Shown here piece by piece: positions 1 to 23,542 of a stretch of DNA of 64,000 bases. Within the stretch, counting starts at the first letter, position 1. The number at the start of each line of letters is the position of its first letter. The stretch covers positions 1 through 64,000 of the IMG/VR virus record IMGVR_UViG_3300031521_001337; one strand, written 5' to 3'. The notes under the pieces were generated by a model. That model was given only the letters and a program-made list of their open reading frames with translations, did no database searches and had not been told where the DNA came from. Made by a program: the position numbers and the translations under genes.

Positions 1-1082
1 TCATCGAGCCACCGGTAACTTTTCAGGTAGACCGCGTGGATCAGATTGAATACCTGCCTGCCGTATTGCGTAACCTGCACTTTATCCGCAAAAAGCTCGA
101 CTTCGAATGGGCATTGGTTACCAATCAGGACGGTTTGGGAACACCGGTATATCCACAGGAAAACTTCGATCAGGTACAAGCCAGCTTTCTGAAGACACTT
201 GCAAACGAGGATATTCATTTCGATAAGATATTCATCGATATATCTTTCCCCGAAGATAATTTACCAACACGCAAGCCGGGCACTGCCATGCTTACCGAAT
301 ATTTCACCGAAGCCTACGATTTAGAAGGCTCATTTGTTATTGGCGACCGCTATACAGATGTTGAATTAGCCAAAAATATGGGCTGCAAAGCTATTTTCAT
401 CAGCACCGACGAGGAGATATTGAAGGAAAAAGGACTGACAGCCTACTGCGCATTGCAAACTACCGACTGGAACCGCATCACCGAGTTCCTCTTTGCAGGT
501 GAACGCACTGCCACGGTAAAACGTACCACCAAAGAAACCGATATCCTTATCGAACTGAACTTAGACGGTTCCGGAAAATGCAACATCAACACCGGACTGA
601 AATTTTTCGACCACATGTTGGAACAAATAGGTAAACACTCCGGTTCCGATTTGACCATTCAGGTGAAAGGCGATCTTGAAGTAGACGAGCATCACACCAT
701 CGAAGATACTGCTATTGCGTTAGGCGAAGCGTTTGGCAAGGCATTGGGCAATAAACGTGGCGTAGAACGTTACGGGTTCTATTTACCCATGGACGACTGC
801 TTGTGCTCTGTGGCTCTCGACTTTGGTGGACGTGCCTGGTTAGTGTACGATGCTGAATTTAAACGCGAATATGTGGGCGATTTACCTACCGAAATGGTAC
901 TCCATTTCTTCAAATCATTCAGCGACGCTGCAAAAATGAATCTGAACATTAAAGCCGAAGGCGATAACGAACATCACAAAATTGAAGGTATATTTAAAGC
1001 ATTAGCCAAATCAATCAAAATGGCTGTAAAACGGGATATCTACCAATATGAATTGCCTTCTACCAAGGGAACGATCTTTTAG
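1..1082 (+). CDS. hisB: Bifunctional histidinol-phosphatase / imidazoleglycerol-phosphate dehydratase (5'-truncated by window), host gene
   Basis: Frame is open from position 3 ([10 protein letters not shown]...). HAD motifs TNQDG, RKP and GDRYTD; IGPD motifs [14 protein letters not shown] and NEHHKIE; C-terminal LPSTKG. GC is visibly higher than downstream DNA. Confidence 0.97.
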
Positions 1083-1194
1083 TAGTTTGTAATGTCTTAT
1101 AAATAAATGAGTTACACCGAAATGTTTTTTAAACTTTTTTATTAGCTCCTACCCTATTGTAGATATATAATACAAATTCAATACTACCTAAAAC

Positions 1195-1233
1195 AAAAAA
1201 GCCAACTACATTAACCCTGTAATTGGCTTTTTT
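1195..1233. terminator. Bidirectional intrinsic terminator
   Basis: aaaaaagccaa...ttggctttttt hairpin with A/T tails on both sides. Confidence 0.7.
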
Positions 1234-1437
1234 GACTTCAATATGCTGGTTTTGAGGTTTACGATTTTTGAAAAAATACTGTTTGCGTAAAGAAGGGAGG
1301 GGTGAGGTTTACTCCATTAGTTAATAACATTTTGACCCCATACCCCCTACAGATAGGTTTGAGGGTTGACTAGTAAGTCTAACCACCTAATTGTCAATAT
1401 GTTTTACAAGTAAAACAACTGATTGTGATAACAATTT

Positions 1438-1592
1438 CAAATGATACGCAAAAAATCTCAAATGATACGTCGGAATTTTCAAATGATACGCTCGAGTTTG
1501 TATGAAAACAGTTAAGTTATTGTGACACAGCGAATTACAAGGTTTCCATATACTTAATATATACTTAATAATTCTATACTTAATGTGGCTGT
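1438..1592 (+). repeat. 155-bp direct repeat copy 1 (iteron origin-like)
   Basis: Matches 34327-34481 with 2 mismatches. CAAATGATACG x3 at 21-bp spacing (1438, 1459, 1480) and TATACTTAAT x3 (1549, 1560, 1575). Confidence 0.95.
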
Positions 1593-1617
1593 ATTCAACA
1601 CATAACGGACTACAAAC

Positions 1618-1651
1618 AAAAAAGGCTGCTACATAATTGTAACAGCCTTTT
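1618..1651 (-). terminator. Intrinsic terminator after 1673..2296
   Basis: aaaaaggctg...cagcctttt hairpin. Confidence 0.7.
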
Positions 1652-1672
1652 AAATTTGGATTGATTTATTGA

Positions 1673-2296
1673 TTAGTCTTCTAATTCAATATCAATACTT
1701 GTATAATCTTCTGAATCTTCTGGATCAATATCATTACAATCAGTAGAATTACTAACTAAATATTTATTAATTAGATCATATTCTTTACTACCTCTTTCGC
1801 AATCTTGACTGATTGTCAACAATTTCTTTGCATCAAGTTCAGTTATATCTTTACCGATAACCAGTTCTGCTTCACGTCTTACTACTTCTCTAACTACTAT
1901 TTTAATTGTTTTACCTTCCATAATGTTGTTTGTTGTTTGTACTGTTTGGTCGTTTTCTTTACCAAATACTAAATTAATGTCGAAAATATCACCCTCTGCT
2001 AAAGAACTATATAATGCAGGTGGCATTATATTTCTACCAGTAATAGCTTTTAAGGCACTAATAAACTCATCTGACTTTGCTATTTCGTCTAAAATAGGTT
2101 GTAATAACGCTTCTAATTTAGGTGTAAATGTATGAGTACTTGTTAAGTATGTATTACTTATCATACCAGATATCATTGCACTCATTCTAATTTTATCTGA
2201 TTCCTCAGCTAAATTTTTAAAAACCATTTGTTTGATGTTTTTCTTAAAAACATCTTCTTGTCCAATTACAAAAATTTCACCCATAATATTAAGCAT
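1673..2296 (-). CDS. Hypothetical protein
   Basis: 207-aa ORF overlapping the upstream gene and followed by a terminator. Confidence 0.7.
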   Translation of the reverse strand: MLNIMGEIFVIGQEDVFKKNIKQMVFKNLAEESDKIRMSAMISGMISNTYLTSTHTFTPKLEALLQPILDEIAKSDEFISALKAITGRNIMPPALYSSLAEGDIFDINLVFGKENDQTVQTTNNIMEGKTIKIVVREVVRREAELVIGKDITELDAKKLLTISQDCERGSKEYDLINKYLVSNSTDCNDIDPEDSEDYTSIDIELED

Positions 2297-2582
2297 TTAA
2301 AAGGTTAATAATTTCTGCCTTCTCTTCTGCACTCATAGTACTTACAGAAGTCTTTAATGCTTCAATTCTTTGTGCTTTAATTTCGGCTTCTTTTTCAGCT
2401 TTCAATGCTGTTAAATTAGCTGTCCATTTCTCACACTTTTCAAGTTGTTCATCACACCTTTTTAGTAGCTCGTCAGATGTTAATAACTTACCAAATGAAG
2501 TACCATAAGAATCTATTGATTCTTTTCTCTGACCTACTTTTTTTACTTGTGCAGCATCTGCACTTTGAATATTTTTATTCAT
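2289..2582 (-). CDS. Hypothetical coiled-coil protein
   Basis: 97-aa ORF with a Bacteroidetes-type promoter upstream (TTTG-17nt-CACCTTTG, 2625-2653). Confidence 0.7.
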   Translation of the reverse strand: MNKNIQSADAAQVKKVGQRKESIDSYGTSFGKLLTSDELLKRCDEQLEKCEKWTANLTALKAEKEAEIKAQRIEALKTSVSTMSAEEKAEIINLLNA

Positions 2583-2694
2583 TTAAATAAAGCAATCTGT
2601 TTTAGTTTGTTTGTGATTGCGATACAAAGGTGCGACAATATGAAAAGCCCAAAAGTAATGGTTAAAATGGTCTAATTTACCTACCCCGCATTAA

Positions 2695-3564
2695 TTAATG
2701 CCACATAGCAGAATATTTATTAAATCTAAAGTCTTGTGTTTTGGTTTTAAACTCTCTATAACAGGACTTTAAATGTTCATCGCCATATAACCAATCTTCA
2801 TTATTATATATACCTGTAAGATATATTAATTTTGAAATAAAAGTAAATTTATTCAAAGATGCTATTTTATCTCCATTTTTAACAGGTTTATCTACAACAT
2901 ATTGTTTAAAGAAGTCAATCATTATTTTAGTGAATAGACAAATACGTGCATAATTTGGTGCATCTTTAGAATTACTTTCTTCAAGCTTAGCAGAATTTAA
3001 AACACTACCAGTTTTTAAACCGTTCAATTCCTCATCACATAACGAAGCCATTAAATAAATCGCTGTATTATTATCTATGACAATACTTTTTTTACCAATT
3101 TTCAACGTAATAGTAGCTTTCTGTTTAAATTCAATATCATTACCATTAATTTTACCTGTTGAATTATCATCTATAGCTTTTACAAATTTTTTCATTTGAC
3201 CAGCTGGACTTTCTTTTGCAACCAAACCACCTACACAATTAGTATATGCAAAATCAAATGCAAATAACAGAAAATACCAAAACTTTTTAGAATCTATATT
3301 AAACGCTTTTAATATGAGTTGTATATTTTTATCTTCTTCATCACCATTCATATAATCATTATAAGTAAAATTGGTTTTTATTGTACCTTGATTATAATTT
3401 TGCACAAAAGTATATAATCCATTCAATGAACACATTAACATACCATTTCCTTCAGCATCAAAATCTGCATCTGGAAGGTGCGTATAAACCATATTACATA
3501 CATATTCTAATAATGGTTCTTCTTCTATACAATCGTCTATATCAAACTGATCTACTACACTCAT
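2695..3564 (-). CDS. Hypothetical protein (standard code, TGG Trp only)
   Basis: Likely start MSVVDQF; TACTTTTG -7 element at 3583-3590. Confidence 0.7.
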   Translation of the reverse strand: MSVVDQFDIDDCIEEEPLLEYVCNMVYTHLPDADFDAEGNGMLMCSLNGLYTFVQNYNQGTIKTNFTYNDYMNGDEEDKNIQLILKAFNIDSKKFWYFLLFAFDFAYTNCVGGLVAKESPAGQMKKFVKAIDDNSTGKINGNDIEFKQKATITLKIGKKSIVIDNNTAIYLMASLCDEELNGLKTGSVLNSAKLEESNSKDAPNYARICLFTKIMIDFFKQYVVDKPVKNGDKIASLNKFTFISKLIYLTGIYNNEDWLYGDEHLKSCYREFKTKTQDFRFNKYSAMWH

Positions 3565-3590
3565 AATATTGTTATTTTTTGACAAAAGTA

Positions 3591-3625
3591 AAAAAAAGTC
3601 TGTAATCAACAAAGACTACAGACTT
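3591..3625 (-). terminator. Terminator closing the lysis cassette
   Basis: Minus strand aagtctgtagtc...gattacagacttttttt. Confidence 0.7.
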
Positions 3626-3630
3626 CAATA

Positions 3631-3837
3631 TTATTTACCAATCTTTTTATATTGGTAATCTACCCCAAACAAAGCACCTGCAAAGGTGCATATTTCCCCA
3701 AAGGCTACTAAAATACTGTTATGTATAACTCCAATGGGTACTACTCAAAAACCCATAAATAAAAGGCATATCCCAGCCAACACCAATACACAAGCTACTG
3801 CTAATTGTACGTTCAATTTTGTTTCTTTCAAATTCAT
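3631..3837 (-). CDS. Small two-TM holin-like protein (1 in-frame TGA=Trp); absent from ORF track
   Basis: MNLKETKLNVQLAVACVLVLAGICLLFMGF[W]VVPIGVIHNSILVAFGEICTFAGALFGVDYQYKKIGK; resembles Bacteroidetes phage lysis-cassette membrane proteins. Confidence 0.8.
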
Positions 3838-3858
3838 TACTTACTTTTTTATTTGTTT

Positions 3859-4452
3859 CTATTTTAACACCTTTATAAATCGAAAGTCTTTTACCTCTGA
3901 ATGAGGATTTAGTTCTTTCACTTCTATAACCTGTATTGTTTGTTTTTTCTGGAACAACCTTCACAAAAAGAATTTCTTTGGTGGTTTTATTGTTTCACGC
4001 TTATCATAAGTAATTGCTATTACTTCATTTCTTACTTTCAAATCTACATTAAGCGTATCTGGTGCTTTAAATTTCAAATCTAGGCTGTACCATTCATCAC
4101 CAGTTTTAGCTTCATAATCACGAATAAACACACTGTCTTTTAATGTTACAGTATCTTTTATTTGTGTTTGGGAATTTATAAAAACCGTTTCAGTTACCTT
4201 TTTAGGTTTAAGTTTTAATTCACCTATCAACGTTTTTACTTTTAAATCAGATGAATCTTTACTATCCTTCAAATCAGCTAAAGTAAATTGATAAACTACG
4301 TTCTTTCTAACTGATGCTTTATAGTTATTGGTAGCCGTTTTTAGCTCCTCATTCAGTTGTTTTGTGTGGTTATATGAAAACCACAATAAAACCCCACAAA
4401 TCAAAGCTATTGAAGCCAGCAGTATAATTAAATATTTCTTTATTGCTATCAT
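3859..4452 (-). CDS. DUF6549-like, spanin-like lysis protein (1 TGA=Trp)
   Basis: N-terminal TM plus coiled coil; read-through gives PPKKFFL[W]RLFQKKQTIQVIEVKELNPH, ending TAG at 3859. Confidence 0.75.
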
Positions 4453-4838
4453 TACGTTTTTATTAGTTGTTTCTTATTATCACCTTCTCTATATTCTATG
4501 TGAACTCAGGCAAAATTATGTTCATCTATCAACTGTCTAAACTCAAAATGTTCTTTTATTAGCTTATAAAGTAAAGCATTATCATCACAATCTAAATCAG
4601 CACAAGTACCTAATAAATGACCAGAAGTACTTACACCACCAACCGCTTTATTTACATCTGGACTTCTAAAACCGCTGTTAATTTTAATTGGTTTACCATA
4701 CAATTCCCTCAAAGGATCTAACACATTTGTAACTAATCTTTGCAGATTAGCTACTTGTGTTTCATTAGGAATATTTACTATCTTTTTATCTGTATGAACT
4801 AGTTCTTCATACGTGAATCATTTTGATACTATTTTCAT
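4452..4838 (-). CDS. Endolysin, peptidase M15A (2 TGA=Trp)
   Basis: LDPLRELYGKPIKINSGFRS, SGHLLGTCAD; read-through restores the catalytic [W]VHIEY motif. Confidence 0.9.
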
Positions 4839-4855
4839 ATTACATTTATTTGATA

Positions 4856-5890
4856 TTATTGTAATGGTGGTTGATTTGAAACGATAGCTGAGTAAGTTTG
4901 TGACCATCCATCATTATTAAAATTCACTCTATAATAGATTGTTGAACCTACAGAAAATTTTGATATTGCACTTGATAAATCAAAATATGCTGAGCCACTT
5001 TGTACTGATGTTCCTGGACTTGTAGTATTAGCATTACAAGTAGCTGATGTGTTAGTTAGGAACTCATTAGTAGTAAAATTAGAATCTGATGCAATTTCAA
5101 ATTTGATATTTACATTATTGTTTTGAACCCTCAAATCACCTAAAATATTTAATGATGCAATTATACCCGAATTACCTGTTTTTCTATATGCAAAGAAAGT
5201 CAAATCTGTATATCTCATTGAATTTGTCCAAGGGTCTGATGGTATTACTACAGAAAAAATATAACATTCACCATCTCCATTATTAGAGATTGCATCAATA
5301 CCACTTATCCATCTTCTATCGGGTGAACTCTTATGTACAACTTTAAACCAAGCTGTTGAACCAACAGTTAAAGCACTACCACCATCGGGTGGGCTTTGTG
5401 GGTTAATTTGAAATTGAAAATATGGGTAATATCCTGTTTGGTCACTTATCATTTTTACAAAGTTTGTATGTACAAAATCATTACCATATCTATTAAAATA
5501 TACATCAAAAGTATGAGCAATTGTAACAGGTGTTTTTGTGCTCATATCTTCTTTTGCATATACTATAGGTAATCTCATATATATAGGTGAATAATAATTT
5601 ATTGAATCGCTAGTTTTATACCCATTGTTTCCAGTGAACGTTATCCAGTTGTGGTCATAATTTCTAAAAACCCCAAGCGGATAACCTTGTTTTGGGAAAA
5701 CTGTTTGATTTTCATTTTGTCTTTGATATGGTGTTTTTCCAAAGTATGCAGATTGTTCTTTATAATCGGGACTATTAAAACCATATTCATTAACTAATGA
5801 ACTCAAACACAATGTTGATACATTATGAGTATTTAAACCTAGTTCTTGCCCTACTAATGTAGTAGTAATATTTGTTGATGGTAATGCCAT
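4856..5890 (-). CDS. Tail-associated protein
   Basis: MALPSTNITTTLVGQELG N-terminus typical of genes following Bacteroidetes phage fibres. Confidence 0.6.
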   Translation of the reverse strand: MALPSTNITTTLVGQELGLNTHNVSTLCLSSLVNEYGFNSPDYKEQSAYFGKTPYQRQNENQTVFPKQGYPLGVFRNYDHNWITFTGNNGYKTSDSINYYSPIYMRLPIVYAKEDMSTKTPVTIAHTFDVYFNRYGNDFVHTNFVKMISDQTGYYPYFQFQINPQSPPDGGSALTVGSTAWFKVVHKSSPDRRWISGIDAISNNGDGECYIFSVVIPSDPWTNSMRYTDLTFFAYRKTGNSGIIASLNILGDLRVQNNNVNIKFEIASDSNFTTNEFLTNTSATCNANTTSPGTSVQSGSAYFDLSSAISKFSVGSTIYYRVNFNNDGWSQTYSAIVSNQPPLQ

Positions 5891-5891
5891 A

Positions 5892-8800
5892 TTATTTATT
5901 TTTTAAAGTATTTATTTCTTGTGTTAGTTCTTGAATTGCTCCGATTAAATATGGTATTAACTTGATATAATCAACTGATAAAAATTCATCGTTATAAATG
6001 TTATGTACTAGGTTTGGAAGTACTTCTTTTAATTGCTGAGCAATAACACCAACATCTGTTTTTTCATCCTTATTTGGGTTTAATTCTTTAGCTTTTTCAT
6101 TCCAATTATATTGCACTGGATTTAATTTATTGATTACGTCCAAAGAATTATTTAATGGTTGAATGTTTTCTTTTAACCGTTCATCAGATGCACTATAAGC
6201 TACTATTTCACCCGCTGCTATTACATTTCCATTTGAAATAAAATTACTAGCAGTAACATTACCATTGAAATGAGAATTATCACTTCCATCAATATAAAAT
6301 GGAGTTGTACCATCGGAAGCATTTCTAATTGAAAATCCAGTGTTTGAAATTCCTTGTATTGAATTTTTAATATAGTATTGCTTAACTCCTGCTTGTGAAC
6401 CTTGTAATTGTATTCTTGCCTCACCTCCAACATCATTTCTAATTAGCACAGCACTTTTGTTAATTAGAGCAATATCACCTGTTCCACTTTCAGCACTAAT
6501 ATATACTGCATTGCCAGTAAACTGTAAGTAACCTTGTCTAACTGTATTTGCTGAATTATAACCACTCAAATAAGCGGCATCAGCAATCATTTTTATTCCC
6601 TCACCTGCATAAGTATTAACAGTTCCAGTTGCCATTAAAGTACCATTCACTGCCAACTTATACCCTTGGTCAGAAATATATCCAATCCCAGTATTACCAT
6701 TAGGGCTAATATAAAACCTCCCAATATCGGGTACTGTATTAGCACTTTGGGTTGATTGAGTAGTAATTGCAAAATCTCCATAAGACTGATAATCTGTATG
6801 TATGAACCATTTCCTAGAACTACCATTAGATACATTATGGTCAAATGATAACATTCCTACCCAACCTGAACCGCTAGGCAATGATAATCTTCCGTTAATT
6901 CCCATCCCACCATTAAGAACTAATGCTCCTGTTGATGGTGATAGTGATTGAGTTGTGTTTGGTATACTTACTACTCCATTACTTTCAATAGTCAATAAGG
7001 GAGTAGTTGCATAATTAAAAGTAAAGGCTTTGTTTCCCCACTGTCCAACAGAATTAAAAATCATTGACCCATAATTATCTCCACTACTAATAAAATAGTC
7101 AAAAGAAGAACCTGAACCAAATTTTAATTTACCTGAATAATTATTAGATGGTATATTAATAGCAAAATAATCACCTCTAGCTGATGCATTTGTCCCATCA
7201 TCACTTATCAAACTATTTACAAAATTACTCCCATTCCATTTAGGAATGTAGTTTGTTGATAAACTTGATAAATCTTGTGTAGCAATATTATTTACGCCAA
7301 TAAAATTTCTAATTTGAGTACTAGTAGCAGGACTCATTCTAGCATTAGGGGCATCGTATACCATTACATAACTTACCGTAGACGCAAAATCAGCGCCATA
7401 GTATTTTAAACCATTTACCATTTCAGCATTCAAATTCCCCACCATAGTAGTAGAATTTACAGTTAATGGTGCTGTTCCAGTTGCTACTGTTGATTGTAGT
7501 TGAGTTGCATTTACTGTAGAAGTAAAAGTTACTGCTCCTGTTTTACTTAACCTAAATCTTTCTGTATAAGTATGTGCAATAGCTTCTGTATTGTATGCTC
7601 TAGCATCAGAATAATCAATTACTAAATCAGTACCACTTCCACTGTATTTGTTGGCAATTCTATAAACTCTTTGGTCAGTTCCACCATCGGCATATAAGTA
7701 CATAGCACTACCATAATCAGAATCCAATGCTCTTAATTCAACACTATGATATGTTACACCAAATTTGCCTTTTCCATACGCTGTAACATCCCCACTAATC
7801 CACATATTTGCAGATTGTGCAGAGCTATTTTGGTTTAATATGTGGTCGTTATTGTTGGTATAAGCCGATGAACCTAGACCTAACCAAGATTGTATTTGAT
7901 TTTGTGTAAAATTATAAACATATCCGTTAGAGTAACCTCCTAGTAAATTAGTAGGTACGGATTGATTAGCAGTTCCATTATATACTGTTCCTAGTGTTAT
8001 ACTAGAGCCTAAAGTCCCACTAGAAGATACAAAGTCTCCAGTGTTACTACTGGCTGCTGAACCGAATGTTCTAGTAGGTAGTGGAGTATAACCTAAAGCA
8101 GTAGTAACCATTCCTGAGTTGATACCAGTTATCCATCCACCGTAGTTACCAAGATTATTATTAAATTGACTGAGATTAGTTGGAAAATCACTAACCTGCG
8201 ACTTAGTAATGCTTATGCCAGTAGATTTATTCCATGCAATAAATATAGGGTCAGTTTCAGTAAAACTAGATAAATAGTTATGTGTATGAGTAGTTATTAG
8301 TCCAGTAAGAACTCCTTCAACTTGGGATTTAGTTATACTAGAAATATAACCACTAGGATTTGTAGAATTATAGGGAGTGTATCCTAATGCTGTAGTAACT
8401 TGAGTTCCAGTTATACCAGTAAGATATCCATATCCAGTCCAAGGAGTACCAGTAACAAATGAACCATAATTACCTAAATCATTAGTAAATTGAGATAATA
8501 ATGTAGGTTTAGAAGTTATTTCTGAATAAGCGTAGCTTGGTTTTGTAGAAGCTTTAGCTCATGAATAAACATCACTAGCTGGTAAAGTTGTAGGATAATC
8601 TGGTAAACCATATCCACTAGTTGTGGTAGGATGGCTACCTGAGTATCAATATCCAACTGATGTTCATGGAGTTCCAGAAACATATGATGTATTATCATAA
8701 GTAATAGAAGTTCCAGACATTCTAACTAGACCAGTACCATTTAATTGAGCTTGAGCTCCAATATCTAATAAAGTTAATCCATGTGGATTACCGCTATTTA

Positions 8801-10631
8801 TTTGTGAATGATCATAAGCAATTTTTCCACGATCTCCTCTATATGCTGTTGCTGAAGTTTCTCCTAAAGCTAAAGATGAGCTGATAATAGCATAAGTAGT
8901 TCCACCTCATCTATAAGTTAAATTAGTGGTTGTGTCTATGTATATCTTACCAGATTCTCCAACTGTAGGAAATAAACTTATAGAAGTATATTCTAATACA
9001 TCATCTACATAAGATGGTAATTGTGAATTTTTTACAAAGCCATTTGAATCAAGTTCTGCCAATCCATTATTAGCTCCTTTTAATGATACATCTAATTTTA
9101 AATCTAATGCACTTTGTGTAGCAGTAGATATTGGTTTCAATAAATCTGATGTATTATCTACATTATCTAAACCTACAGCAGCCTTATTTAAAGGTTGGAA
9201 TGTTTTATCACCTCTTCAGTAATCAGTAATTAATCCTGATGTTATATTAGGTTCTTTAGTATTTAAAGCTAATTGAGTTAAGATTGATATAGGTTTGTCT
9301 ATATCTCTAGTATTATCTACTTGACTTAATCCAATTTGTGCTTTAGTTGTAAAGTGAGGATTATTTGTATTAGTAATGTGAGCTTGTATATTAGCATTAG
9401 CTGGTTCTTTAGTAGCTAATTTAATATTGTTATTAGCAATAGTTTCATAAGGTGTTAAATCTTGATCATCACTATGAGCTACGTGTATTTTAGCAATATC
9501 TACATTTAATACTAAAGAATATCCAGGAATTTTTACAACTAATCCAGATAGATCTTGATCATCACTATGTGGTGCATGTAAATTTGTCTTTTCTGAATCA
9601 GTTACATAATTATCATCAGTTCCTTTTTTAGGTTCTGCATAATTTTGAACATAAGTTTCAGTTGCTAATCCTGTTATACTTGGAATATTAGGTTTATTTA
9701 ATATTAAAGTATCTCCACTAGTTGCATTTCAATCAGCATTTACATTTGCTTCTGCTCCAGTTTGAATTCCATCTAATTTATTTTTATATGTATTAGTAAA
9801 ATCATTAGTAGATAATCCTTTTCCAGTTTCTTTTGGTTGTAATACTGATAAATCTTGATCTCCAGTATTCTTACCACTTACTAAATCTAATGCTGCTTTA
9901 TTACTATGTAAATGTGTTTCTAAGAACGCGGAATCATAAGCAGCTTTTAATTCATCTGTTAAATCATTAGTACTTAATCCTTTTCCGAGAATTTTATCAA
10001 CTTTAGTTCCTAATGCTGCATATAATCCTTCTACTTCTCCAGTAGATAATGGAGCATTTAAATATAAATGAATCAAAGCATTAGTAATCGTTTTAACTAA
10101 TATTGCAAAATCATCTTGCATATAATAATTTGGGTCACTATTAAATCTCATCATTACTTCTGATAAGTATTGTAATAATTCAAACAAACTATTAATTTGA
10201 GGAAGTAATGTTGGATCGGATGGAAATAAACTTCCAGATCCTGGTGTGATACTTGGGATTGCATTTACAGATTCATATGATCCTAATACATCATTATTAC
10301 TTGGTGAATTAGTATTCAATGATAAATCTGTAGGAACTGCATTATCGTATACCGGAATATCAGTATTTAATAACATCCCATTATTTTGTATAGTAGGTGT
10401 TACTACTATTTCATTTGAAAGATTATTGAATTCTGTTGTATTCAAATCTAATAATGATGGATTATTCTGAGATTCATGTTGAATGAATTCAGAATTTAAT
10501 AAAGTAACAGTTAAAGTAGTTGATATAATATCGCTATCTTTAACTGTTACTTCATCTGGTACATCAGTTACTATTAAATTATCTACTGTAGGAATTACAA
10601 TATCTGTTAATAGTATATTGCTTTGTATCAT
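5892..10631 (-). CDS. Long tail fibre (about 1579 aa) with C-terminal peptidase S74 chaperone domain; 6 TGA=Trp
   Basis: Track ORFs 9729..10631, 8907..9140 and 5892..8111 are one frame joined only by TGA: NVNAD[W]NATSG, DY[W]RGDKT, TYR[W]GG, PASDVYS[W]AK. Ends with SDERLKENI...GVIAQ. Confidence 0.9.
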
Positions 10632-10653
10632 TTATTTATTTTAAAATATATAA

Positions 10654-12111
10654 TTATTTTGGAATATATCTACAAGTTATATGTGACCCTGGGGTATCAA
10701 TTAAATATATTGTATTTGCATCAAAATAAGAAACAACGTATGATACACCCGAATCTTCGTAAACCTGTAAGTTAAATATATCTTTTGGTTCTTTAGATAA
10801 AACGAATTCAGTATTAACAGAATCTGTAGCACCAGTTGGAGTTTCTTGTATTATATTTTTAGGTGGAATATATTCACTTATAATATCCCATTTATTACTA
10901 ATTCTATTAGTTATTAATGTTATAGAACTATTAGGTGGAATTTGATAAGGTACTCCATGTCCTAAATTTTCAATTTGCGCATCAAGATCTAAAACCAGTA
11001 TATTACTAACATTTGTAGAATTTTCATTCTTAAATATTAATTGTTTTCCGTCAACAACATCATTTATTACTGGTAATCATAAGTTAATATTTGTACCATT
11101 TGTTATTATTATGTCATAAGTATTTAAAACATCAAAAACACCAGCTTCAGTAAAGTTAATAATTACAGGATTTTTTATTGGCAACCCATCTATAATATCT
11201 GCATTAATTCTTTTATTATCTTTTGGTTTAATATGAATAGGATCTTCTCCATTTATAAGATTATAAACAGTATTTTCATCATTATTGTACGCAGCTACAG
11301 CCCCTTCTGTACCACTAAAATCAGAACCAATTAAATCACCATTTTGATAATGGGTTGTAGCTAAATTCTGTTGTAATCAAACTTGATTACCAATAGTTAC
11401 TGAATGATAAGTAATTCCATCAATTACAATACTACCTTCATTAATTGAATTATCTTTAATAAGTCTAATTGATCTTCCAGTTTCTTTTATACTTGGAACA
11501 CTTAATAAAACATATGCATTATCATTACTAATATCAATTAGTTTACCTTCTGAATTACTATATTCATCATAAGCTCAAAAACCCAAATGTCTATTTATTA
11601 AATAAAATGAACCATCTGTATCTCTTACTCCTGAACCTCTAGCATTAAAATTAACACTATTAGAAGCATCTACATTTGGACTTTCTCAATAAGTATTTCC
11701 TGTTTCTTTTAATTTTCCACCTGAAACATCATCTCCACCTAAAAAATTACTTAATGTTTGAAAATCAGATAAAGTTGGAATATGTCAACCACTAGGTGCT
11801 ATACTTCTAGAATCTATTACAATATATCAATTATAAAGTCTTCCATATTTAACATCTTGGACTAACATTGTAGATTGTTCTCATTTACTTGTATCTCCAC
11901 CACTACCATATTCTTTAACTATTAAATCAACATCTTCTAACCCGTTTCTAAATCAATATTCAACTCCGTTAATATTTAAAGTTAATTTATCATGTCTATA
12001 TGGACGAGGTACATTAATTAACCCCTCTTCAATTGTTTCTCAAGGACCGTATCTATCATCAATAGATTTTGGTGCTCGTATTTGTAAGTTATCATTAAAA
12101 TCTATTGCCAT
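10654..12111 (-). CDS. Virion protein with Fib_succ_major (FISUMP) domain, 485 aa, 9 TGA=Trp; absent from ORF track
   Basis: YGRLYN[W]Y, APSG[W]HIPT, GGKLKETGNTY[W]ESPN, IGNQV[W]LQQNL. Confidence 0.88.
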
Positions 12112-12112
12112 A

Positions 12113-12841
12113 TTATGCAGGTATTTGTCCAAGTGATTCTGCTACATATAATGAAGCTACTTGTGTTGAATAATTAGTCATATATATTTTATAACTTTTA
12201 TCTAATAGTGTTTCTGGAATTCTAATTGTCATTATAGTTTCAGTATCAAATAGATTTCTTGTTCCACCTATATCTCCACTATTTTGATTATCAACATATC
12301 ATATTGCTTTAGATTGAATATCTGATGGAATTGCAAACCATAAATAATCTGTATTATTAGAGTTGTAAGGAATGTTTAATGCTTCACTTGGATCTCCATA
12401 AACCATAGTTCCAGAATTAATCAATGATTGATTTTTACTTGGTTTAGTATTACTTACAACTTTACCTCAGAAATATGGAGGTGTATAAGGTTCTGGAATA
12501 ATACCACTAGGATCATCAACTGTAATTACATCTACATTATCGTATACACGTTGTCATGTATAAATAGTTTGTGGTGTATTTACATTTTTATAGAATTCAT
12601 TAGTTCTTTGCATTTCTTCTATAATCTTAGGATTGTTTCTAATTATATCTTTTCTAAATTTCTTTAGTTTTACTTGTACTGTTGAAGGTTCTCCTGATCA
12701 ACTTGCTCAATCAAATACTTCATCGACTACAATTAAAGCCATTATGTCATTTGATAATTTTTTATCATCTATAGCTAAATATTCAAGATTTCTCAAATAT
12801 TTAACTGTAGTTGATACTATTGATTGTTTAACTTCTTCCAT
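12113..12841 (-). CDS. Putative structural/tail protein, 242 aa, 5 TGA=Trp
   Basis: Open from MEEVKQSIV to TAA at 12113 under code 4; abuts both neighbours. Confidence 0.8.
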
Positions 12842-12842
12842 T

Positions 12843-13454
12843 TTATTTACAATTACAATCATTCAATACTCTTGAATTATCACTTCTTAGTCAAGGTGAT
12901 CAAGAGATAAATTGTTTCTTTATAATATCATAAAACATTTCAGCATCATCAAATCGTTCAAGTCTCATGGCTTCTAAATGAGCATATAAGAACATATAAT
13001 TTCTGATTAATGTTTGATAATCATTTGTTGTAATACATCTTGCATCTAAATTAAGTAAGTAATCTTTTAAAAGAATATATACTTTATTTACATCTGATGT
13101 TACTCCAATAACATCTGGTATAAGTGGTACTGGTAATGTTGGATTACCTGGTGTAGGTTCAATTCACTCTACTCCAAATTGCACATAAAATAATGTACTT
13201 GCCAAATTACCATCAACACCAGGTTCAATTTGAAATCCACTTAAAGCCTCAGTAGATATTCTCATAATTTCTTTTGTAGAAGTTCTTTGTAATAGATGTG
13301 ATACATCTCTTCAAAGATCATCTGTACTATTTATTGGTATAGCATCATATTTCTTAATAAATAGTTTATTAAATAAATAATTTGTTGGACACTCTACACT
13401 AAATTCTAGATATTTACTATCTGGTGAAATTCTTAGTAAGTTTATTTGAATCAT
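12843..13454 (-). CDS. crAss-type tail hub/fibre-attachment-like protein, 203 aa, 4 TGA=Trp
   Basis: MIQINLLRISPDSKYLEF... ending DCNCK; C-terminal CxC as in crAss-like tail proteins. Confidence 0.75.
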
Positions 13455-13459
13455 GATTA

Positions 13460-13690
13460 TTAGTCTTGTTTAGTTATTTTAGAAGTTAATCCCATTGCAC
13501 CACATGCTACTAACACGTATCCACAAACCTTAAAAATAATTGGAGCAACTCCATATTGTTGTAAATCTATAACTCCATTCATAACTAATATACCGAAGGC
13601 TGCACCTCCGAGTATAATAGATATATTAGTTATTTTTTTAAATATTGCTGGACTTTCTGTGGTCCATCTTTGTTTTAGTTCTTTAAACAT
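13460..13690 (-). CDS. Holin-like two-TM protein
   Basis: MFKELKQRWTTESPAIFKKI followed by two hydrophobic helices. Confidence 0.7.
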   Translation of the reverse strand: MFKELKQRWTTESPAIFKKITNISIILGGAAFGILVMNGVIDLQQYGVAPIIFKVCGYVLVACGAMGLTSKITKQD

Positions 13691-13700
13691 ATAAATAAGT

Positions 13701-15896
13701 TTAGCTGTTTCTAACTTCATCATTACGATGATTAGCATCTAATAATTGTGCTCCTTCAAGTTTGATTCTTGTTTTATCGTCTTCCAATTTAGCAGCATTA
13801 TATTCTGATAAATTTTTAGCTTCATACCATCCAAGTTCTTTATCGAATGATAATCTTTCTCTATCCATCTCCATTTTCTCTTGATTGTTTTTACCAACCT
13901 GAGCTTGTAGTTTTGAATTTTCTTGTTGAAGTTGTTTTAATTGTTGTTGTAATTGTTCGGATTGTTGTTGTAATTGTCCAAGTTGATCATTTTCTTTTTT
14001 CTTCTTAGCTAATGATAACTTAACATCTTCTTTCATTTTAGTTAAACCTTTCGATGTAATAATTTCAATTAATGTTTCTGGATCAACCAATCCTCCTTTT
14101 ACTAATTCCATTCCTAATTGTTTGATAGTTTCTTGTTCTTTCATAATTTCAGAACTATCACCAATATGAATATCATAATCAGTTGTTGTATAATGTTCAG
14201 GTAATGCTGTAAATATTTTATTTAATCTATCACCTAATATAAGTGACCCACTCATTCCTTTCTTATAAACAATTTTAGCAAGATTAAGAATATCAATTAA
14301 GATTTCTCTTGTTATTAAGTCCATAATTTGATAGTATTGTTTAGTAATATAAGAAGAATTTCTTACACCTACTGCAACATTTGTTACAGCATCTCGTTGT
14401 TCTATTCCACCTAATTTTTCTTTAAATACACCTGTAATCATTGAACAAGTATCTTCAATTCTTTGAATCGCTAAATCAAAAGCTTGTATAGTATTAAATT
14501 TTAATGTATCATCAAATCCATTCATAGCAGTATTAAGCATTTGACCTTCTTGTGAAGAATCGTATAATTTCATACCAGCTTTACCATAAGCTTTAAATTT
14601 CATTAATCTTTCAGCTAAATCTGCACCTAATACTTTAGGTAAGTGAGCTATATCAATTAAATCTCCCGCAGTACCTGATTCAGATATTACGTTATCTCTC
14701 ATAAAATTAATCAAGTCATATTTGTCTTGCAAATTCGCTGTCTTTAATACTAGAGAGAAAGGATCGCCATTTCTATCAGAATAGAACATACCATTTACTG
14801 TTAATGTACAATGTGTTTTATCATCTACACTTCTAACTACATCCTCACATTTACCTGTAGTAATATAAATATTAGTAGCTATACGTACACCTTCATAACG
14901 ATTAGTAATATATTTGTCATCTTCTTTTTCAGTCTTTAATCATTCAACTTCATATACTGGAAAAGTTCTAAAATATTTAGAAGTACTTCTTTCATAAGGT
15001 AATAGAGGAGTTATTTCAAATCCCCCAAGTATACCATCTGACATTGTATTTCCTGTAACTGAATCATAACTTCTAAGATAAGTTGTTGCTGATCCATCAT
15101 TAGCAAAATCTTGTAATGTATCTAATGATTCTAAATCATCAGGTTTTAATGAATCTCCATACTTTGCAAGTATTTGATCCTTAGTTAAATAATCTCTAAT
15201 TACAGAACGTGCCGAATCTTTAAGATAAGGTGATTCTGGATTTCTATCAATGAATGTATTTATTGGATTTAATACTCTAAGTTTTACATTTGATTTACTA
15301 ACTGATGGACATACTTTATAATAAGCTGTCGCACTAACTAATAAATCTGTTAGTAATATTTTTCTTTGATTTTCAAAATCAATTATTCGAGATTGCATTG
15401 TTCAATCAACTATATTTTGTCCTGCTATTTCATAGTTAGACATAAAATTTCTATCGAGTGATTCATGTAATTCTTGAAGTTCTAATTCAATTTGTTTATC
15501 AGGAGCATCTGATCCTATTGTAGAACTATATACAGCATTCTTTAAATGCTTATTTAATTCTTTAGCAATGTTATCATGTATGTGTAATTGTTTATCTCTA
15601 TCAATATTTGATAATGTTGTATGGTCTTTACAAGAAATTTTAGGAAGAACTGGCGTTGATAAGTATTCACCAATTAAAACATCTACGTGTTTTCTAACTA
15701 ATGGTACAAATTCAATTGATGTAGGAGTACCTATCCCATAATTTTCTTCTAAATGTCTGAATTGTTCAGGGTCTCTTTTACCATGATAATAGTTATAGGC
15801 TTTAATGATTTGGGTTTTTTCATAAACCAATTCATTAATAGCTCTATCTATATTATCCATTATATCTTTTTCTTTATCGTCAATTTGTTTATCCAT
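13701..15896 (-). CDS. Portal protein (crAss-like), 731 aa, 2 TGA=Trp
   Basis: Three in-frame track ORFs joined by TGA at 15402 and 14940; KAYNYYHGKRDPEQFRHLEENYGIGTPT, PVYEVE[W]LKT, GGIEQRDAVTNV. Confidence 0.93.
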
Positions 15897-15898
15897 TT

Positions 15899-16171
15899 TT
15901 ATTCTTCTCTTGTTTCAGAGTTTCTATATACTTTATATACTTCTTGTCTAACATAATTTCTAACTCTTAATTCTGTGTATACATAATTTAAGAATTCTTC
16001 GTCAGTTTCACAGTCTATAGCAAATGAGGTTTGCACCATGTAACTTGGAATACCTAAAACACACTTATAACCAGGATTGAGTTTATCAACTCTTATTAAT
16101 CCTGTATAGTCAGCTTTATATCAGCTCTTTATATAATCACGAATCGCTTGCGCTAATTCTAGCTCGTCCAT
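15899..16171 (-). CDS. Conserved crAss-like protein between terminase and portal, 90 aa, 1 TGA
   Basis: MDELELAQAIRDYIKS[W]YKADYTGLIRV...EEFLNYVYTELRVR. Confidence 0.8.
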
Positions 16172-18224
16172 CTCTATTGTCTTTTGCTGGTATTATACCA
16201 TGATGTTTATAACCTTTATTATCTGTTCACCAACCTATGTTTTGGAATCCTTTACCTTCTACTTCTTTTGCTTCAGGACGTTTAACTGACATTTCTTCAT
16301 CACCAAGTTCACACATTCCCATTGCAGCTACGATATCAAAGTCTTTCTTTCCTTCATCCGTATAATCTAATAATTGATCAACCATATCTTTAAACGCCAT
16401 TGTACGGGAGTAATCCAAAATGTAATCATATATTAATTCACGATAATGTAGAATAACTTTAACTGTTGCAGGAGTTCCATACATTTGACTATTACCTTTA
16501 GATACATCAGGCATTGTAGACCTTGGTCTTTTCATTAATAGATGTAAATATTTTTTATCTCTAAAATAAGTAATAATAGCTGTTCTTGTTGATTCTAATA
16601 CAGCTTGACATCCATAATAAGTTAATAGTTTTGCTGCTGCATCGTAAGCTTCTCTAGGATCTTTAGGTCTGTCTTTATACATTGCTACATAAACAGGATC
16701 AGATTGTCCGAACACTCTTTTCTTTATAACAATACAAAATTCAGATCCTTTACCATCAGCACTTGCTGAATCAGCAGTACCAATATCAATAGAGTCAATT
16801 CCACCTACGTATAAGTTTTTATAATCTGTCCCTAATTCGGACATTAAAGGATGTTCTATAATTTGGATTTTTCCATCTTGTGCATCCTCTCTTCATTTAA
16901 CCCCATCTGCTCTATCATCTCCATCTCGTTTTCATACAAGATGTCCTGAATGTATTGTAGGAGTTGATTTGTAAATTTCTATTTGTGCAAGTTGTTCTGC
17001 AAGTTCTTCTCTAGGAAATAAATTATCAGCATGTTGTATAAGAGCTTCTTCAATAGTAAAACAATACTCTGACTTAAATTCTAGTAAATCCTTTGGACTA
17101 TTAACTAATTTAATTCTTTCTTGTTCATACCAATCTTTAGCTTTTTCTAAATTACATCATCCTCGTTTATCAACTAAATCATAAACAACTCTATAAGCTG
17201 GAATAAATAATCCACTTAATATGTATCTACCATCTCTAGTATAATTATGTTTAACAGGTAAAATATTATATGCAGTTGGATCATTTGTCATTCTTTTAAG
17301 TCCTTCCATAGAACTAGCTTTAGATGATCCACCTGTACCAAATGCAATCTTTCTACCAACGCGTTTACCTCCAAGTACTGTTATTAATGCAGTACCTTTA
17401 ACTCATTTTTTCATCAAAACAGGATCTGCTCCTGCTTCTTCGTAAATTAGAATTTGTGTTCTATCACCCCTTAACTTATCGGGTTCATCACATACTAATC
17501 CTTCTACTTCTGACTTATGACTGTCTGGCGCTTCACCACCATCTTTATCTTTCTTAGATGCTCTTTTATGAGTCTTAGAATTTGCTACCATTCTAACCCT
17601 TTTGAAAGCTCCTTCTGTATTTTCATTTAATCAATCCATTTGAATCCATATCTTATCAAGTGTTGGTTTCAAATGCTTTTCTGAAAACGTAGAAACTACT
17701 GAACGAAAGTTAGGAATTGTTGTATATGGTCTAGTTATAAAACTAGAAGCCATTTCCGAGAATCCGATACCACGACTTTTAAGTACTGAAGTATCTTTCT
17801 TTAATTTTTCACACATTTCCAAGTAATGGAAATATTCGTATTGAAAAACAAGAAACTCAGGAAATCCATAAGATTGATTAATTGTTTCTGAATCAGAAGA
17901 TTTAAGGTTATAAAAATTAATGAAGAAATAATTATCTCCAGTTATACGATAACCATTGACTTCATATCCTTCATTACATCTACGTATTCTTTCTTTCCAT
18001 CAATCTCTATGAGTTTTAGAACCCATAGGTATAGATGATGGACTATATCTACCTGTTTTTAATTTGTTAATTGCATCTTCTCTAAATCAATCAGGATTAA
18101 AGTCTAATGCATCAACATCATTAATAGGGCGATATTTAGTCATAAAGAAAGATTTATAACTATCGAAATATTCAATTTTATCATCTGGACCAAAATCTCA
18201 TGTTATTCCATCAAGTATTTTCAT
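16116..18224 (-). CDS. terL: Terminase large subunit, 702 aa, about 10 TGA=Trp
   Basis: One frame: YRITGDNYFFINFY, LKSRGIGFSE (Walker A region), RGDRTQILIYEEAG (Walker B), YVGGIDSID nuclease motif, FDIVAAMGM. Confidence 0.95.
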
Positions 18225-19036
18225 ATAAAACCTCCCGCTGTTTTTCTTTTACCTTTAGCACATGCTGAAATATTAGCATGATTTATATTTAATTCTTTTT
18301 CTGCATCAGTTATACTAACAAATTCCTTAATAAAAATATTATCTTTTGAATATTGTATTATAGAAATAGTATGAATTCCTTTAGTTGATTGTTTTCCTCT
18401 TTTGCTTTTTTCTGGAATTATATTATCTTTAGAATCAATATAAAATTTTCAAATAAACCCACATGTTGTTAAATTCTTTCCTAAACAAACACTACCTATA
18501 TTTTTAGCACTATAACCTAGTTCTCTTTCAATAATTGCAGCACTTTCTCAAGTTTTTATATATTTTCCAGTTTTATCATATTGATTAACTTTTTTTGAAT
18601 AAGTTTTTTCAGAACTTCCAAATCTTGGATTTAATTCTCCTTTAAATTTTTCAGATTGATTCTTTTTCATATCATCAGTTCAACGATCTTTTTTCTTTTG
18701 AATTTGTTCTTCAGTTTCTTTTACTCCTAATCTATGTTGATTTCCACCACTACATATATTATATCCAGTTTTTACACAATCATATTTTGAAATATATTCA
18801 ATTTCTAATTCATTCAATCTATCTTGTAATTCTGATTTTAATTCGAAATCTATTACTTCTAATATACTATGTTCAAAATTATTAAAACCATATTTCTTAA
18901 TAGCATTAAATAGTTTTTTCTGATTTTTACAATTATGAAATGTTTTATATTCACTCAATCTTTTTTTCATGTTGACTGTTTGTCCAACATAACATTTACC
19001 ACTTGGTGATATTAATTTATATATAAATCCTTTCAT
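18203..19036 (-). CDS. GIY-YIG homing endonuclease with NUMOD1 repeats, 4 TGA=Trp
   Basis: GFIYKL...CYVGQT; read-through gives TTCGFI[W]KF and TAGGFI[W]KY. Confidence 0.88.
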
Positions 19037-19038
19037 AA

Positions 19039-19614
19039 TTAATCGAATAATCCAATTTCAGTATTACCTCTTACGTTACTTTCAATTTCTAATCCTTTCT
19101 TAACTTGAACTTGTAATTCACGTAAAGTAGATATTAAATCTTTACAGCCTTTAATCTCAGCAATTAAGTCTTTACTTTTAAAGATTGGTTTTCCCGTAAT
19201 AGGATCTCTTTCTTGTAAATCTACATTACTTAAATAAAATATTTGATTATCAACAGCATTCATTGCCGCCTTTAATAATTTTATGTCTAATGATGAATTT
19301 TGGATTTCATCATATTTTTGACACGCCATTCTAAATTTAGGATCGTCAAACTCTTCGTCTGACAATCCTGAATCTTTCATAGCCTCTGCATGTTTATCTT
19401 GTTCTGTATATTGAAAATAAGGACTTTCTCAATCAAAGAACAGATATATAAATTTAAATTCTTTAAATGCTCTCAACCGTTTTTTACCCGTTTTGTCGGC
19501 ACTACTTTTATTTCTATTATCTTCTAACAAAGCTTCAAATTCCTTTATTAAAAGTATACTTGTGTCTTCGAGAGATACATTTCCATTTACATTATCATAT
19601 ACAAAAAATTTCAT
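19039..19614 (-). CDS. Conserved crAss-like protein upstream of terL (possible small terminase), 1 TGA
   Basis: Two track ORFs fused: YLFFD[W]ESPYFQYTEQDKHAEAMKDSGL. Confidence 0.8.
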
Positions 19615-19619
19615 AATTT

Positions 19620-20807: not shown

Positions 20808-20823
20808 TTTAATTGTTTAGTGA

Positions 20824-21420: not shown

Positions 21421-21659
21421 TATTGTATTTTCAAAAGATCTTTAGTATTAAAAGTATCTTTTACAATCTCCCCAGTTGTTGTGAATCACATACATTGAAT
21501 TCCTTGGAAGAAATCATTCTTTACATCAGAAGTTCTAATAGTTTTAGTAACTTTTTTTACCACAATCATAGTGGGTTTATTTGGTACATCTTGTCTAAGA
21601 CTTACTACATCTCCAGGTAGGAAAAACTGCTTATCGTTGTTTCGTTGTTCATTAATCAT
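21420..21659 (-). CDS. DUF2158/YodC-like small protein, 1 TGA
   Basis: FLPGDVVSL...PTMIV...GIQCM[W]FTTTGEIVKDTFNTKDL. Confidence 0.75.
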
Positions 21660-22077: not shown

Positions 22078-22080
22078 TTT

Positions 22081-23529: not shown

Positions 23530-23542
23530 TACATTTTCATTG

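What the first reader, a model, noticed from the sequence alone, without database searches (positions are those of the whole stretch)
1060..1140. crAss-like phage joined to the 3' end of chromosomal hisB
Composition changes right at the hisB stop. The protein ends LPSTKGTIF, whereas I recall LPSTKGVL-type endings as usual, so the last codons may be element-derived. The next bases (TGTAATGTCTTATAAATAAATGAGTTACA) form an imperfect inverted repeat like those at the ends of Bacteroidetes tyrosine-integrase elements. Crassvirales are generally regarded as non-integrating, so a real recoded prophage would be notable. No integrase is visible in this window.
Basis: partly seen in the sequence, partly recalled or inferred. 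Interest (0 to 1): 0.75.

Follow-up and report, generated by a model that had tools for sequence, protein, structure and literature searches.

The report
Recoded small prophage in hisB; crAss part chimeric
The hisB junction is a real prophage attachment site, but the integrated element is a 35-kb temperate phage that reads TGA as a sense codon in its late genes, and the 177-kb crAss-like phage filling most of the window is joined to it only by assembly through shared repeats.

Summary
The composition break and the odd HisB ending (…GTIF*) are real. They mark attL of a prophage family that integrates into the last codons of Paludibacter hisB. Two complete prophages of 34.5 and 36.0 kb, one on another IMG/VR contig and one in an independent MAG, have both junctions. 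Both carry a 10-bp core, ACCAARGGAA, with the displaced native hisB end (…ML*) at attR. Empty sites end …G(I/M)L*.

The integrase is a 642-aa large serine recombinase at the far end of the prophage, not a tyrosine integrase. The prophage has an HK97-type capsid gene. TGA is a sense codon in its late genes but is absent from its integrase. It carries its own atypical tRNA(UCA). The host has RF2, so it uses the standard code.

The source contig (213,486 bp) is most likely a composite of three things:
- the hisB spur (1-1938);
- a 28.7-kb circular relative of the prophage;
- a 176.6-kb crAss-like phage (Crass_capsid MCP, own portal and terminase, no integrase).

These are joined at a 320-bp shared stretch and a 1945-bp identical tail-fibre repeat. 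Three other assemblies and contig depths show the hisB-linked path leaving the window at 1938. The flagged inverted repeat is at chance level. Recoded prophages are already known (Borges et al.), so this is a new member of a known kind.

The parts
1..1082 (+). 3' part of host (Paludibacter) hisB, bifunctional histidinol-phosphatase/IGP dehydratase. Codons from 1072 on (T-I-F-stop) are supplied by the prophage.
   Evidence: Pfam IGPD 1.1e-59 plus Hydrolase_like. 99% aa identity to HisB of Paludibacter MAG JAFLKK010000008.1. Related empty-site genomes stop matching at 1057-1071.
1062..1071 (.). attL common core ACCAAGGGAA. The crossover is inferred to lie within its last four bases.
   Evidence: The same 10 bp (with A at position 6) stands at attR of G002 and of G001, followed by the displaced native hisB end TGCTTTAG. 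Empty sites L003 and L012 have the core followed by TACTTTAA / TACTCTAA.
1072..1618 (.). Left arm of the hisB-integrated prophage (G002 type). It includes a conserved 90-bp element (1253-1342) and a 155-bp copy (1438-1592) of the crAss-like phage's regulatory region.
   Evidence: 99.2% identical to IMGVR_UViG_3300031722_000097 and about 99.3-99.6% to Ga0302215 and Ga0302293 over their overlaps with the window. 1083-1348 is also in the G001 prophage at 96-97%. Exact Logan contigs span 1037-1323, 1313-1467 and 1438-1648.
1619..1938 (-). 320-bp stretch (terminator plus 3' end of ORF 1673-2296) shared by the hisB prophage and the circular 28.7-kb phage. This is the first chimeric switch point, at 1938/1939.
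   Evidence: Identical to contig 206925-207244. A branch behind 1938 is seen in all four runs. G002, Ga0302215 and Ga0302293 all leave the window path exactly at 1938.
1939..6235 (-). Segment B of the 28.7-kb temperate phage ('BRD'), a relative of the hisB prophage. It includes the 3' end of a tail-fibre gene with an S74 chaperone domain (5892-).
   Evidence: Duplicated at the contig end, closing a circle. ORF 2695-3615 is 46% aa identical to the G002 orthologue. Peptidase_S74 1e-19. The depth of this path equals the depth of the circle junction.
6236..8180 (-). R: a 1945-bp repeat inside tail-fibre genes, identical at 182881-184825 and 211542-213486. This is the second switch point, and the contig ends exactly at its boundary.
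   Evidence: Self-BLAST. Open frames continue in both contexts. Other assemblies resolve it as C-R-C (L107) or C-R-B (L102, L110).
8181..64000 (.). Part of a 176.6-kb crAss-like phage (segment C, running to contig 182880), TGA-recoded in its late genes. It includes the portal (13704-15923 -), the large terminase (16119-18248 -), tRNA(UCA) (30014-30087 -), and the divergent control region 34236-34748, which carries the 155-bp element at 34327-34481.
   Evidence: MCP at 178086-179519 matches PF23898 Crass_capsid at 48 bits against a cut-off of 27 (atlas). Portal and terminase are atlas leads scoring 0.95-0.97. TGA read-through gives frames of 2986 and 2820 aa. tRNAs. No G002 gene hits C.

Best explanation
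Window 1-1938 is the left junction (attL) of a 34.5-36 kb temperate phage integrated into the last codons of Paludibacter hisB.

Integration. A 642-aa large serine recombinase, encoded at the far end of the prophage, recombines a phage site with a host site. The two sites share only the 10-bp core ACCAARGGAA. The phage arm supplies new terminal codons (GTIF* in place of G-M/I-L*), so hisB stays open. That this recombinase does the joining is inferred from its position and domain make-up.

Recoding. The prophage has HK97-type capsid, portal and terminase genes interrupted by conserved in-frame TGA codons, while its integrase and other early genes have none. It carries an atypical tRNA with anticodon UCA. 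The host has RF2. This matches the published model in which recoding keeps late genes silent during lysogeny. That model is inferred here, not shown.

The rest of the contig is not part of this prophage. After 1938 the assembly switched, through a 320-bp shared stretch, into a related 28.7-kb circular phage (segments B-R-D, with a different serine recombinase). It then switched, through a 1945-bp identical tail-fibre repeat, into a separate 176.6-kb crAss-like phage that has its own capsid, portal, terminase, 25 tRNAs and no integrase.
For: Integration:
- attL, attR and the core were found in two complete prophages. G002rc has the core at 980-989 and 35500-35509. G001 has it at C3:386181 and 422233, and GC rises to 0.43 beyond.
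- L003 is an empty site: hisB is followed after about 50 bp by the homologue of G002's right-flank gene.
- The non-lysogen hisB end appears as a loose end at 1071.
- The recombinase has Resolvase, Recombinase and Zn_ribbon_recom domains and no in-frame TGA. It is 97% identical in G001.
- No tyrosine integrase is present.

Recoding:
- TerL, portal and MCP pieces separated by TGA match consecutive profile positions.
- 20 TGA:TGA pairs are conserved between orthologues.
- A tRNA scores 45.9 bits and has anticodon UCA.
- The host has prfB at 452 bits.

Composite contig:
- The contig's repeat structure reads A-B-R-C-R-D-B-R and ends at a repeat edge.
- G002 genes hit only B and D, never C.
- Two unrelated capsid systems are present: PF05065 in D and PF23898 in C.
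- C has its own portal and terminase.
- Three other assemblies follow the G002 path after 1938.
- In all four runs the depth of the window path after 1938 (23/8.1/74/30) is matched by the circle junction (30/7.9/68/27). In X2, 15.1 + 7.9 = 23, close to the 22.1 on the shared stretch.
- L107 shows C-R-C.
Against: - Two other samples' contigs (L102, L110) show C-R-B as in this contig. Assemblies alone therefore do not exclude a physical C-R-B link.
- In run X8 there is no visible depth drop at 1938.
- The circular (attP) form of the hisB prophage was not found in IMG/VR, so activity is unproven.
- The exact crossover dinucleotide is unresolved, and G001's attL has G at core position 9.
- The anticodon stem of the prophage tRNA has two mismatches, so its function is inferred.
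Confidence: 0.85

Rival explanations
1. One reading: the whole low-GC contig is one roughly 205-kb crAss-like prophage integrated at hisB.
For: The contig is continuous from hisB into crAss-like genes. CheckV calls it 100% complete. A serine recombinase exists at 203816-205546. C-R-B is also assembled in two other samples.
Against: - The contig closes on itself (1619-8180 = 206925-213486) instead of reaching a right host flank.
- It holds two unrelated capsid and packaging sets.
- Complete prophages at this site are 34.5-36 kb and lack every C gene.
- The contig's recombinase is only 26.5% identical to the one that sits at the hisB site.
- The hisB-linked path leaves at 1938 in three assemblies and by depth.
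Confidence: 0.03
2. In the source sample a natural recombinant exists. A hisB-integrated prophage has the G002-type left arm up to 1938 and then continues as the B-R-D phage. The first join would then be biological, while the crAss-like part is still a separate genome.
For: These phages are mosaics that share 83-100% identical patches. In X8 the depth does not fall at 1938, and X8 has its own variant of 1349-1437.
Against: - In all four runs the window path after 1938 is accounted for by the circle junction depth.
- All three other assemblies carrying 1351-1380 take the G002 path.
- B-R-D carries a different recombinase and lacks the G002-type arm 1072-1252.
Confidence: 0.08
3. The hisB junction itself is an assembly artefact and nothing is integrated there.
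For: Depth drops about ten-fold at 1040-1100. The contig is composite elsewhere.
Against: - The same junction occurs in four independent assemblies and in a MAG from another study, with matching attR and host right flank.
- Exact Logan contigs bridge 1037-1323 in four runs.
- The depth step is explained by several non-lysogenic strains collapsing on the hisB body (SNP table).
Confidence: 0.02

Closest known systems
Alternatively coded prophages (Garnet and Topaz clades), Borges et al., bioRxiv 10.1101/2021.08.26.457843
   Same: A small (about 24-35 kb) prophage in a standard-code host, including Bacteroidota. Late and structural genes are full of in-frame reassigned stops. The integrase is free of them. 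A suppressor tRNA is present. The lysogens are a minority of the host population.
   Different: Here the reassigned codon is TGA, whereas the two prophages analysed in depth there are TAG-recoded. Here the integrase is a large serine recombinase and the target is the 3' end of hisB, whereas their prophage boundaries are marked by an integrase and a host tRNA gene. The habitat is peat, not gut.
Large-serine-integrase phages (phiC31, Bxb1, A118, SPbeta type; from general knowledge)
   Same: Resolvase, Recombinase and zinc-ribbon architecture. Very short identity between attP and attB (10 bp here). The integrase gene lies next to attP. Integration is into a protein-coding gene.
   Different: Here the phage arm restores an open reading frame with three new codons instead of disrupting the gene. 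The central dinucleotide and directionality factor are unknown.
Crassvirales / crAss-like phages (large, epsilon-like genomes)
   Same: This applies to segment C only. It has a Crass_capsid MCP, a P22/SU10-type portal, two opposed gene blocks, giant late ORFs, TGA recoding with tRNA(UCA), and no integrase.
   Different: It comes from peat and its likely host is Paludibacter. It is 176.6 kb with 25 tRNAs and a tmRNA. It is not integrated. Its late proteins are mostly beyond PHROG and Pfam recognition.
Inter-genomic repeat chimeras in metagenome assemblies
   Same: The contig path re-uses graph nodes (B and R appear twice or three times) and stops exactly at a repeat edge. Different samples resolve the same repeat differently.
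   Different: The shared repeats here are themselves biologically informative. A fibre segment and a regulatory segment have been exchanged between phages of one host.

Membership tests
Integrated prophage (site-specific) | Both junctions with host DNA on each side and a shared core | tested here: met
   attL and attR with the core ACCAARGGAA in G002 and in G001. The displaced hisB end sits at attR.
Integrated prophage (site-specific) | An unoccupied site in related genomes or the same population | tested here: met
   L003 and L012 have empty sites. A non-lysogen loose end lies at 1071 in run X1.
Integrated prophage (site-specific) | An excised circular form (attP) is detectable | tested here: not met
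   The predicted attP junction is absent from IMG/VR. It was not searched in raw reads.
Large serine recombinase integrase | N-terminal Resolvase domain plus Recombinase domain plus zinc-ribbon domain, over 500 aa | tested here: met
   The 642-aa protein scores 66.9, 46.9 and 36.9 bits, all above the cut-offs.
Large serine recombinase integrase | Identical central dinucleotide in attP and attB; recombination activity | tested here: inconclusive
   An A/G difference at core position 6 limits the crossover to GGAA. Activity cannot be tested here.
   No PF00589 match at E<=1 in G000 or G002. The repeat is no better than shuffles.
Crassvirales, for the element joined to hisB | crAss-type major capsid protein in the integrated element | tested here: not met
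   The prophage MCP is HK97-type PF05065, with TerL PF03354/PF20441 and portal PF04860. No G002 gene matches segment C.
Crassvirales, for segment C (8181-182880) | crAss-type major capsid protein | tested here: met
   PF23898 at 48 bits against a cut-off of 27. Atlas score 0.99. No phylogeny was made, so the family-level placement is untested.
Alternatively coded (TGA-recoded) phage | In-frame TGA inside conserved essential genes, with homology continuing across it | tested here: met
   Consecutive profile coordinates across TGA in TerL and portal. 4 TGA inside the TerL_nuclease match. TGAs conserved between orthologues.
Alternatively coded (TGA-recoded) phage | Suppressor tRNA and a standard-code host | tested here: met
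   tRNA(UCA) in G002 at 45.9 bits and in C. Host prfB at 452 bits. The 28.7-kb B-R-D phage has no detectable tRNA.
Alternatively coded (TGA-recoded) phage | Amino acid inserted at TGA (Trp expected) | tested here: inconclusive
   One TGA:TGG pair. TGA stands at W-like positions of an HNH motif read by eye. There are no protein data.

The most novel reading that the evidence does not exclude
The temperate phages and the crAss-like phage of this Paludibacter host may be functionally coupled, not merely co-resident.
- The 28.7-kb B-R-D phage has TGA-recoded late genes but no detectable suppressor tRNA. It may depend on tRNA(UCA) supplied in trans by the crAss-like phage or by the hisB prophage.
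- The hisB prophage carries a 98.7% identical copy of the crAss-like phage's control region, with three TCAAATGATACG boxes. This copy could let the prophage sense or interfere with crAss-like infection.
Probability: 0.08. Interest if true: 0.8.

Novelty: new member of a known kind. Interest (0 to 1): 0.4.

Why it matters
- It removes a false lead. This contig is not evidence for an integrating crAss-like phage, and IMG/VR's '100% complete, 213 kb' record is probably three entities.
- It gives a cleanly delimited TGA-recoded prophage in a standard-code environmental Bacteroidota host. The att sites are defined to 10 bp, with a serine integrase and a gene-end replacement. This extends the recoded-prophage phenomenon beyond gut TAG examples and offers a compact attP/attB/integrase set that can be tested.
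- The fibre segment (100% identical) and the control-region segment (98.7% identical) link a 177-kb peat crAss-like phage to a Paludibacter host.

Tried and rejected
- I first read the 96.9% match of window 1-1348 to the Paludibacter MAG as showing that host DNA runs 266 bp past hisB. I rejected this because the MAG is itself a lysogen: GC is low from L002 position 7000 on, the same integrase lies 36 kb away, and attR is present.
- I considered the 90-bp similarity 1253-1342 / 206136-206225 as an att core. I rejected it: it is phage DNA conserved among relatives, single-copy in the host, and has no Rfam match.
- I considered the 22/27 similarity at 1592-1618 and the L002 terminator match at 1618-1656 as att half-sites. 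I rejected this because similar hairpins occur elsewhere in the host.
- Megablast of 1083-9000 against GenBank phages found nothing.
- PHROGs on ten late proteins of C gave almost nothing.
- Terminase_6N and Terminase_6C models find no terminase in C.
- The attP pattern was not found in IMG/VR.
- A second run search shows only that C co-occurs in the same peat samples, which does not discriminate between the models.
- Related fibre genes in L104-L108 support a C-type N-terminus paired with a C-type C-terminus on one gene. Their flanks are too mosaic to count as C relatives.

Full report
**Observation**

The window is bases 1-64000 of a single 213,486-bp IMG/VR virus record.
- GC is 0.45 in 1-1000 and about 0.29 for the remaining 212 kb.
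- ORF 36-1082 is bifunctional HisB: IGPD 1.1e-59 plus a HAD-like domain. It ends ...LPSTKGTIF*.
- The inverted repeat flagged after the stop codon is no better than chance: -0.5 kcal/mol, z = 0.62, and 140 of 200 shuffles fold as well.

**Anatomy of the contig**

Self-comparison shows three repeats:
- 1619-8180 is identical to 206925-213486, the contig's end.
- A 1945-bp stretch R occurs three times: 6236-8180, 182881-184825 and 211542-213486. The contig ends exactly at its edge.
- 1438-1592 is 98.7% identical to 34327-34481.

The path is therefore A(1-1618), B, R, C(8181-182880), R, D(184826-206924), B, R. This is how a graph assembler walks a spur plus a figure of eight. The two loops are B-R-D (28,661 bp) and C-R (176,645 bp).

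**The hisB junction is a real attL**

A pattern unique to 1351-1380 found another IMG/VR contig, G002 (36,010 bp, CheckV 98%), and two metagenome contigs.
- In reverse complement, G002 matches window 83-1938 at 99.2%.
- It then runs through 34.5 kb of low-GC phage DNA. At its far end it has a 642-aa serine recombinase gene, about 100 bp of spacer, the sequence ...CCGTTC ACCAAAGGAA TGCTTTAG GCAGTTATCAG..., and a GC-rich host gene.
- The window's attL reads ...CCTTCT ACCAAGGGAA CGATCTTTTAG.
- In run X1, a contig of the dominant hisB variant leaves the window after 1071 with TGCTTTAGGCAGTTATCAGT. The unoccupied gene therefore ends ...GML*, and that end is what stands at attR.
- L003, a related MAG, is an empty site. 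Its hisB ends ...ACCAAAGGAA TACTTTAA, and about 50 bp later comes the homologue of G002's right-flank gene.
- The Paludibacter MAG that matched window 1-1348 at 96.9% is itself a lysogen. GC is low from the hisB stop on. The same recombinase (97% identical) lies 36 kb downstream. attR stands at C3:422233, followed by a GC rise to 0.43-0.45.

The triad of attL, attR and empty site is complete in independent data. The shared core is 10 bp. An A/G difference at core position 6 between attL and attR places the crossover in the last four bases (inference).

**What the integrated element is**
- The recombinase has Resolvase, Recombinase and Zn_ribbon_recom domains.
- No tyrosine integrase is present in either contig.
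- The late genes are a TerL (PF03354 and PF20441), a portal (PF04860) and an HK97-type capsid protein (PF05065). Each is cut by in-frame TGA codons into pieces that match consecutive profile positions.
- The TGAs are conserved between orthologues: 20 TGA:TGA pairs and one TGA:TGG pair.
- The recombinase and several early genes have no in-frame TGA.
- Default ARAGORN found no tRNA. Rfam finds one at 45.9 bits, and relaxed ARAGORN reads its anticodon as UCA, with two mismatches in the anticodon stem.
- The host MAG has prfB (452 bits), so TGA is a stop codon for the host.

This is the situation that Borges et al. described for TAG-recoded Garnet and Topaz prophages.

**Why the rest of the contig is not this prophage**
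1. G002 and both metagenome contigs leave the window path exactly at 1938. All four runs that were laid show a branch there.
2. Depths point the same way.
 - Pieces specific to the hisB arm have depth 9-47.
 - The junction D-to-B has depth 30.4, 7.9, 67.7 and 26.5 in X1, X2, X3 and X8.
 - This matches the window path after 1938 (23, 8.1, 74, 30).
 - In X2 the shared 320 bp carry 22.1, close to 15.1 + 7.9.
3. G002's genes match only B and D, in order, and never C. B-R-D is therefore a complete relative of the prophage. It has a different recombinase (26.5% identity) and lacks the 1072-1252 arm.
4. C has its own virion genes.
 - MCP at 178086-179519: PF23898 Crass_capsid, 48 bits against a cut-off of 27.
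 - A P22/SU10-type portal at 13704-15923 and a terminase at 16119-18248. Both are atlas leads.
 - D has an HK97 capsid gene and its own TerL.
5. One assembly (L107) joins C-R-C. A related fibre gene pairs the C-type N-terminal region with the C-type C-terminus.

Against this, two assemblies join C-R-B as here. I could not compare the depth of C with that of B and D.

**Segment C**

Segment C is a crAss-like phage, and it has no integrase.
- It has two opposed gene blocks.
- Reading through TGA gives frames of 2986 and 2820 aa.
- It has a tRNA(UCA) at 30014-30087, 24 further tRNAs and a tmRNA.

**Comparison with known systems and verdict**

Recoded prophages in standard-code hosts are known. 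Serine integrases that target coding genes are known (general knowledge). Possible temperate epsilon crAss-like phages have been discussed.

The new points are the particular combination and the host link:
- TGA recoding, a serine integrase, replacement of the hisB 3' end, and a peat Paludibacter host.
- A fibre segment and a control-region segment shared with a 177-kb crAss-like phage, which ties that phage to the same host.

The headline claim, an integrated crAss-like phage, is not supported.

Noticed in passing
window 1438-1592 and 34327-34481: A 155-bp element with three TCAAATGATACG boxes. It stands in the crAss-like phage's divergent control region and, 98.7% identical, near attL of the hisB prophage. 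Both copies are real, since they have distinct SNPs and depths in the reads. It is absent from the G001 prophage.
   Followed up: partly
window 1253-1342; contig 206136-206225; L002 7251-7340: A 90-bp element conserved at 91-97% in three related temperate phages, always ending where their sequences diverge. It has no Rfam match and is single-copy in the host genome. Its function is unknown.
   Followed up: partly
window 6236-8180 (= contig 182881-184825): A 1945-bp, 100% identical middle part of tail-fibre genes, shared by the 28.7-kb temperate phage and the crAss-like phage. The N-terminal anchors and the S74-type C-termini differ. This points to recent exchange in a common host.
   Followed up: yes
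L090:10041-10111 (-), in G002: A 71-nt tRNA with anticodon UCA and two mismatches in the anticodon stem. Default ARAGORN misses it, but Rfam scores it at 45.9 bits. Surveys that rely on default tRNA callers may undercount suppressor tRNAs.
   Followed up: yes
contig 184826-213486 (L098, L099): The 28.7-kb B-R-D phage has TGA-recoded late genes (4 TGA inside the TerL nuclease match) but no tRNA at E<=0.1. How it decodes TGA is open.
   Followed up: partly
contig 205659-206111 and 206493-206900 (L001 2081-2533, 2915-3322): Next to the 577-aa recombinase lie two genes. One is an AlaX-like tRNA_SAD protein (1.2e-10). The other is a small gene with an HNH-endonuclease-like motif and in-frame TGAs at W-like positions (read by eye). 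The HNH gene is absent from the G002-type arm.
   Followed up: partly
window 22084-23553, 48054-49187, 49652-50812; contig 68160-88810: The crAss-like phage encodes a Cpn60-like chaperonin (1.1e-40), an OmpA-domain protein and a glutathionylspermidine synthase (3.3e-131). It also has a 24-tRNA array and a tmRNA.
   Followed up: no
contig 138211-155629: Two giant recoded late ORFs of 2985 and 2819 aa. One carries a UvrD/AAA_30-type helicase region. Otherwise they have no family match.
   Followed up: no
window 1-1100 (reads): The hisB body has depth 100-900 with many SNPs, against 9-47 for the lysogen-specific pieces. Several Paludibacter strains coexist and only a minority carry the prophage. 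The hisB part of the contig may itself be a strain mosaic.
   Followed up: partly
L090:3817-5049 (-), in G002: The prophage carries a PIN_8-domain protein (2.8e-63) among its TGA-free genes. It could be a defence or accessory gene.
   Followed up: no
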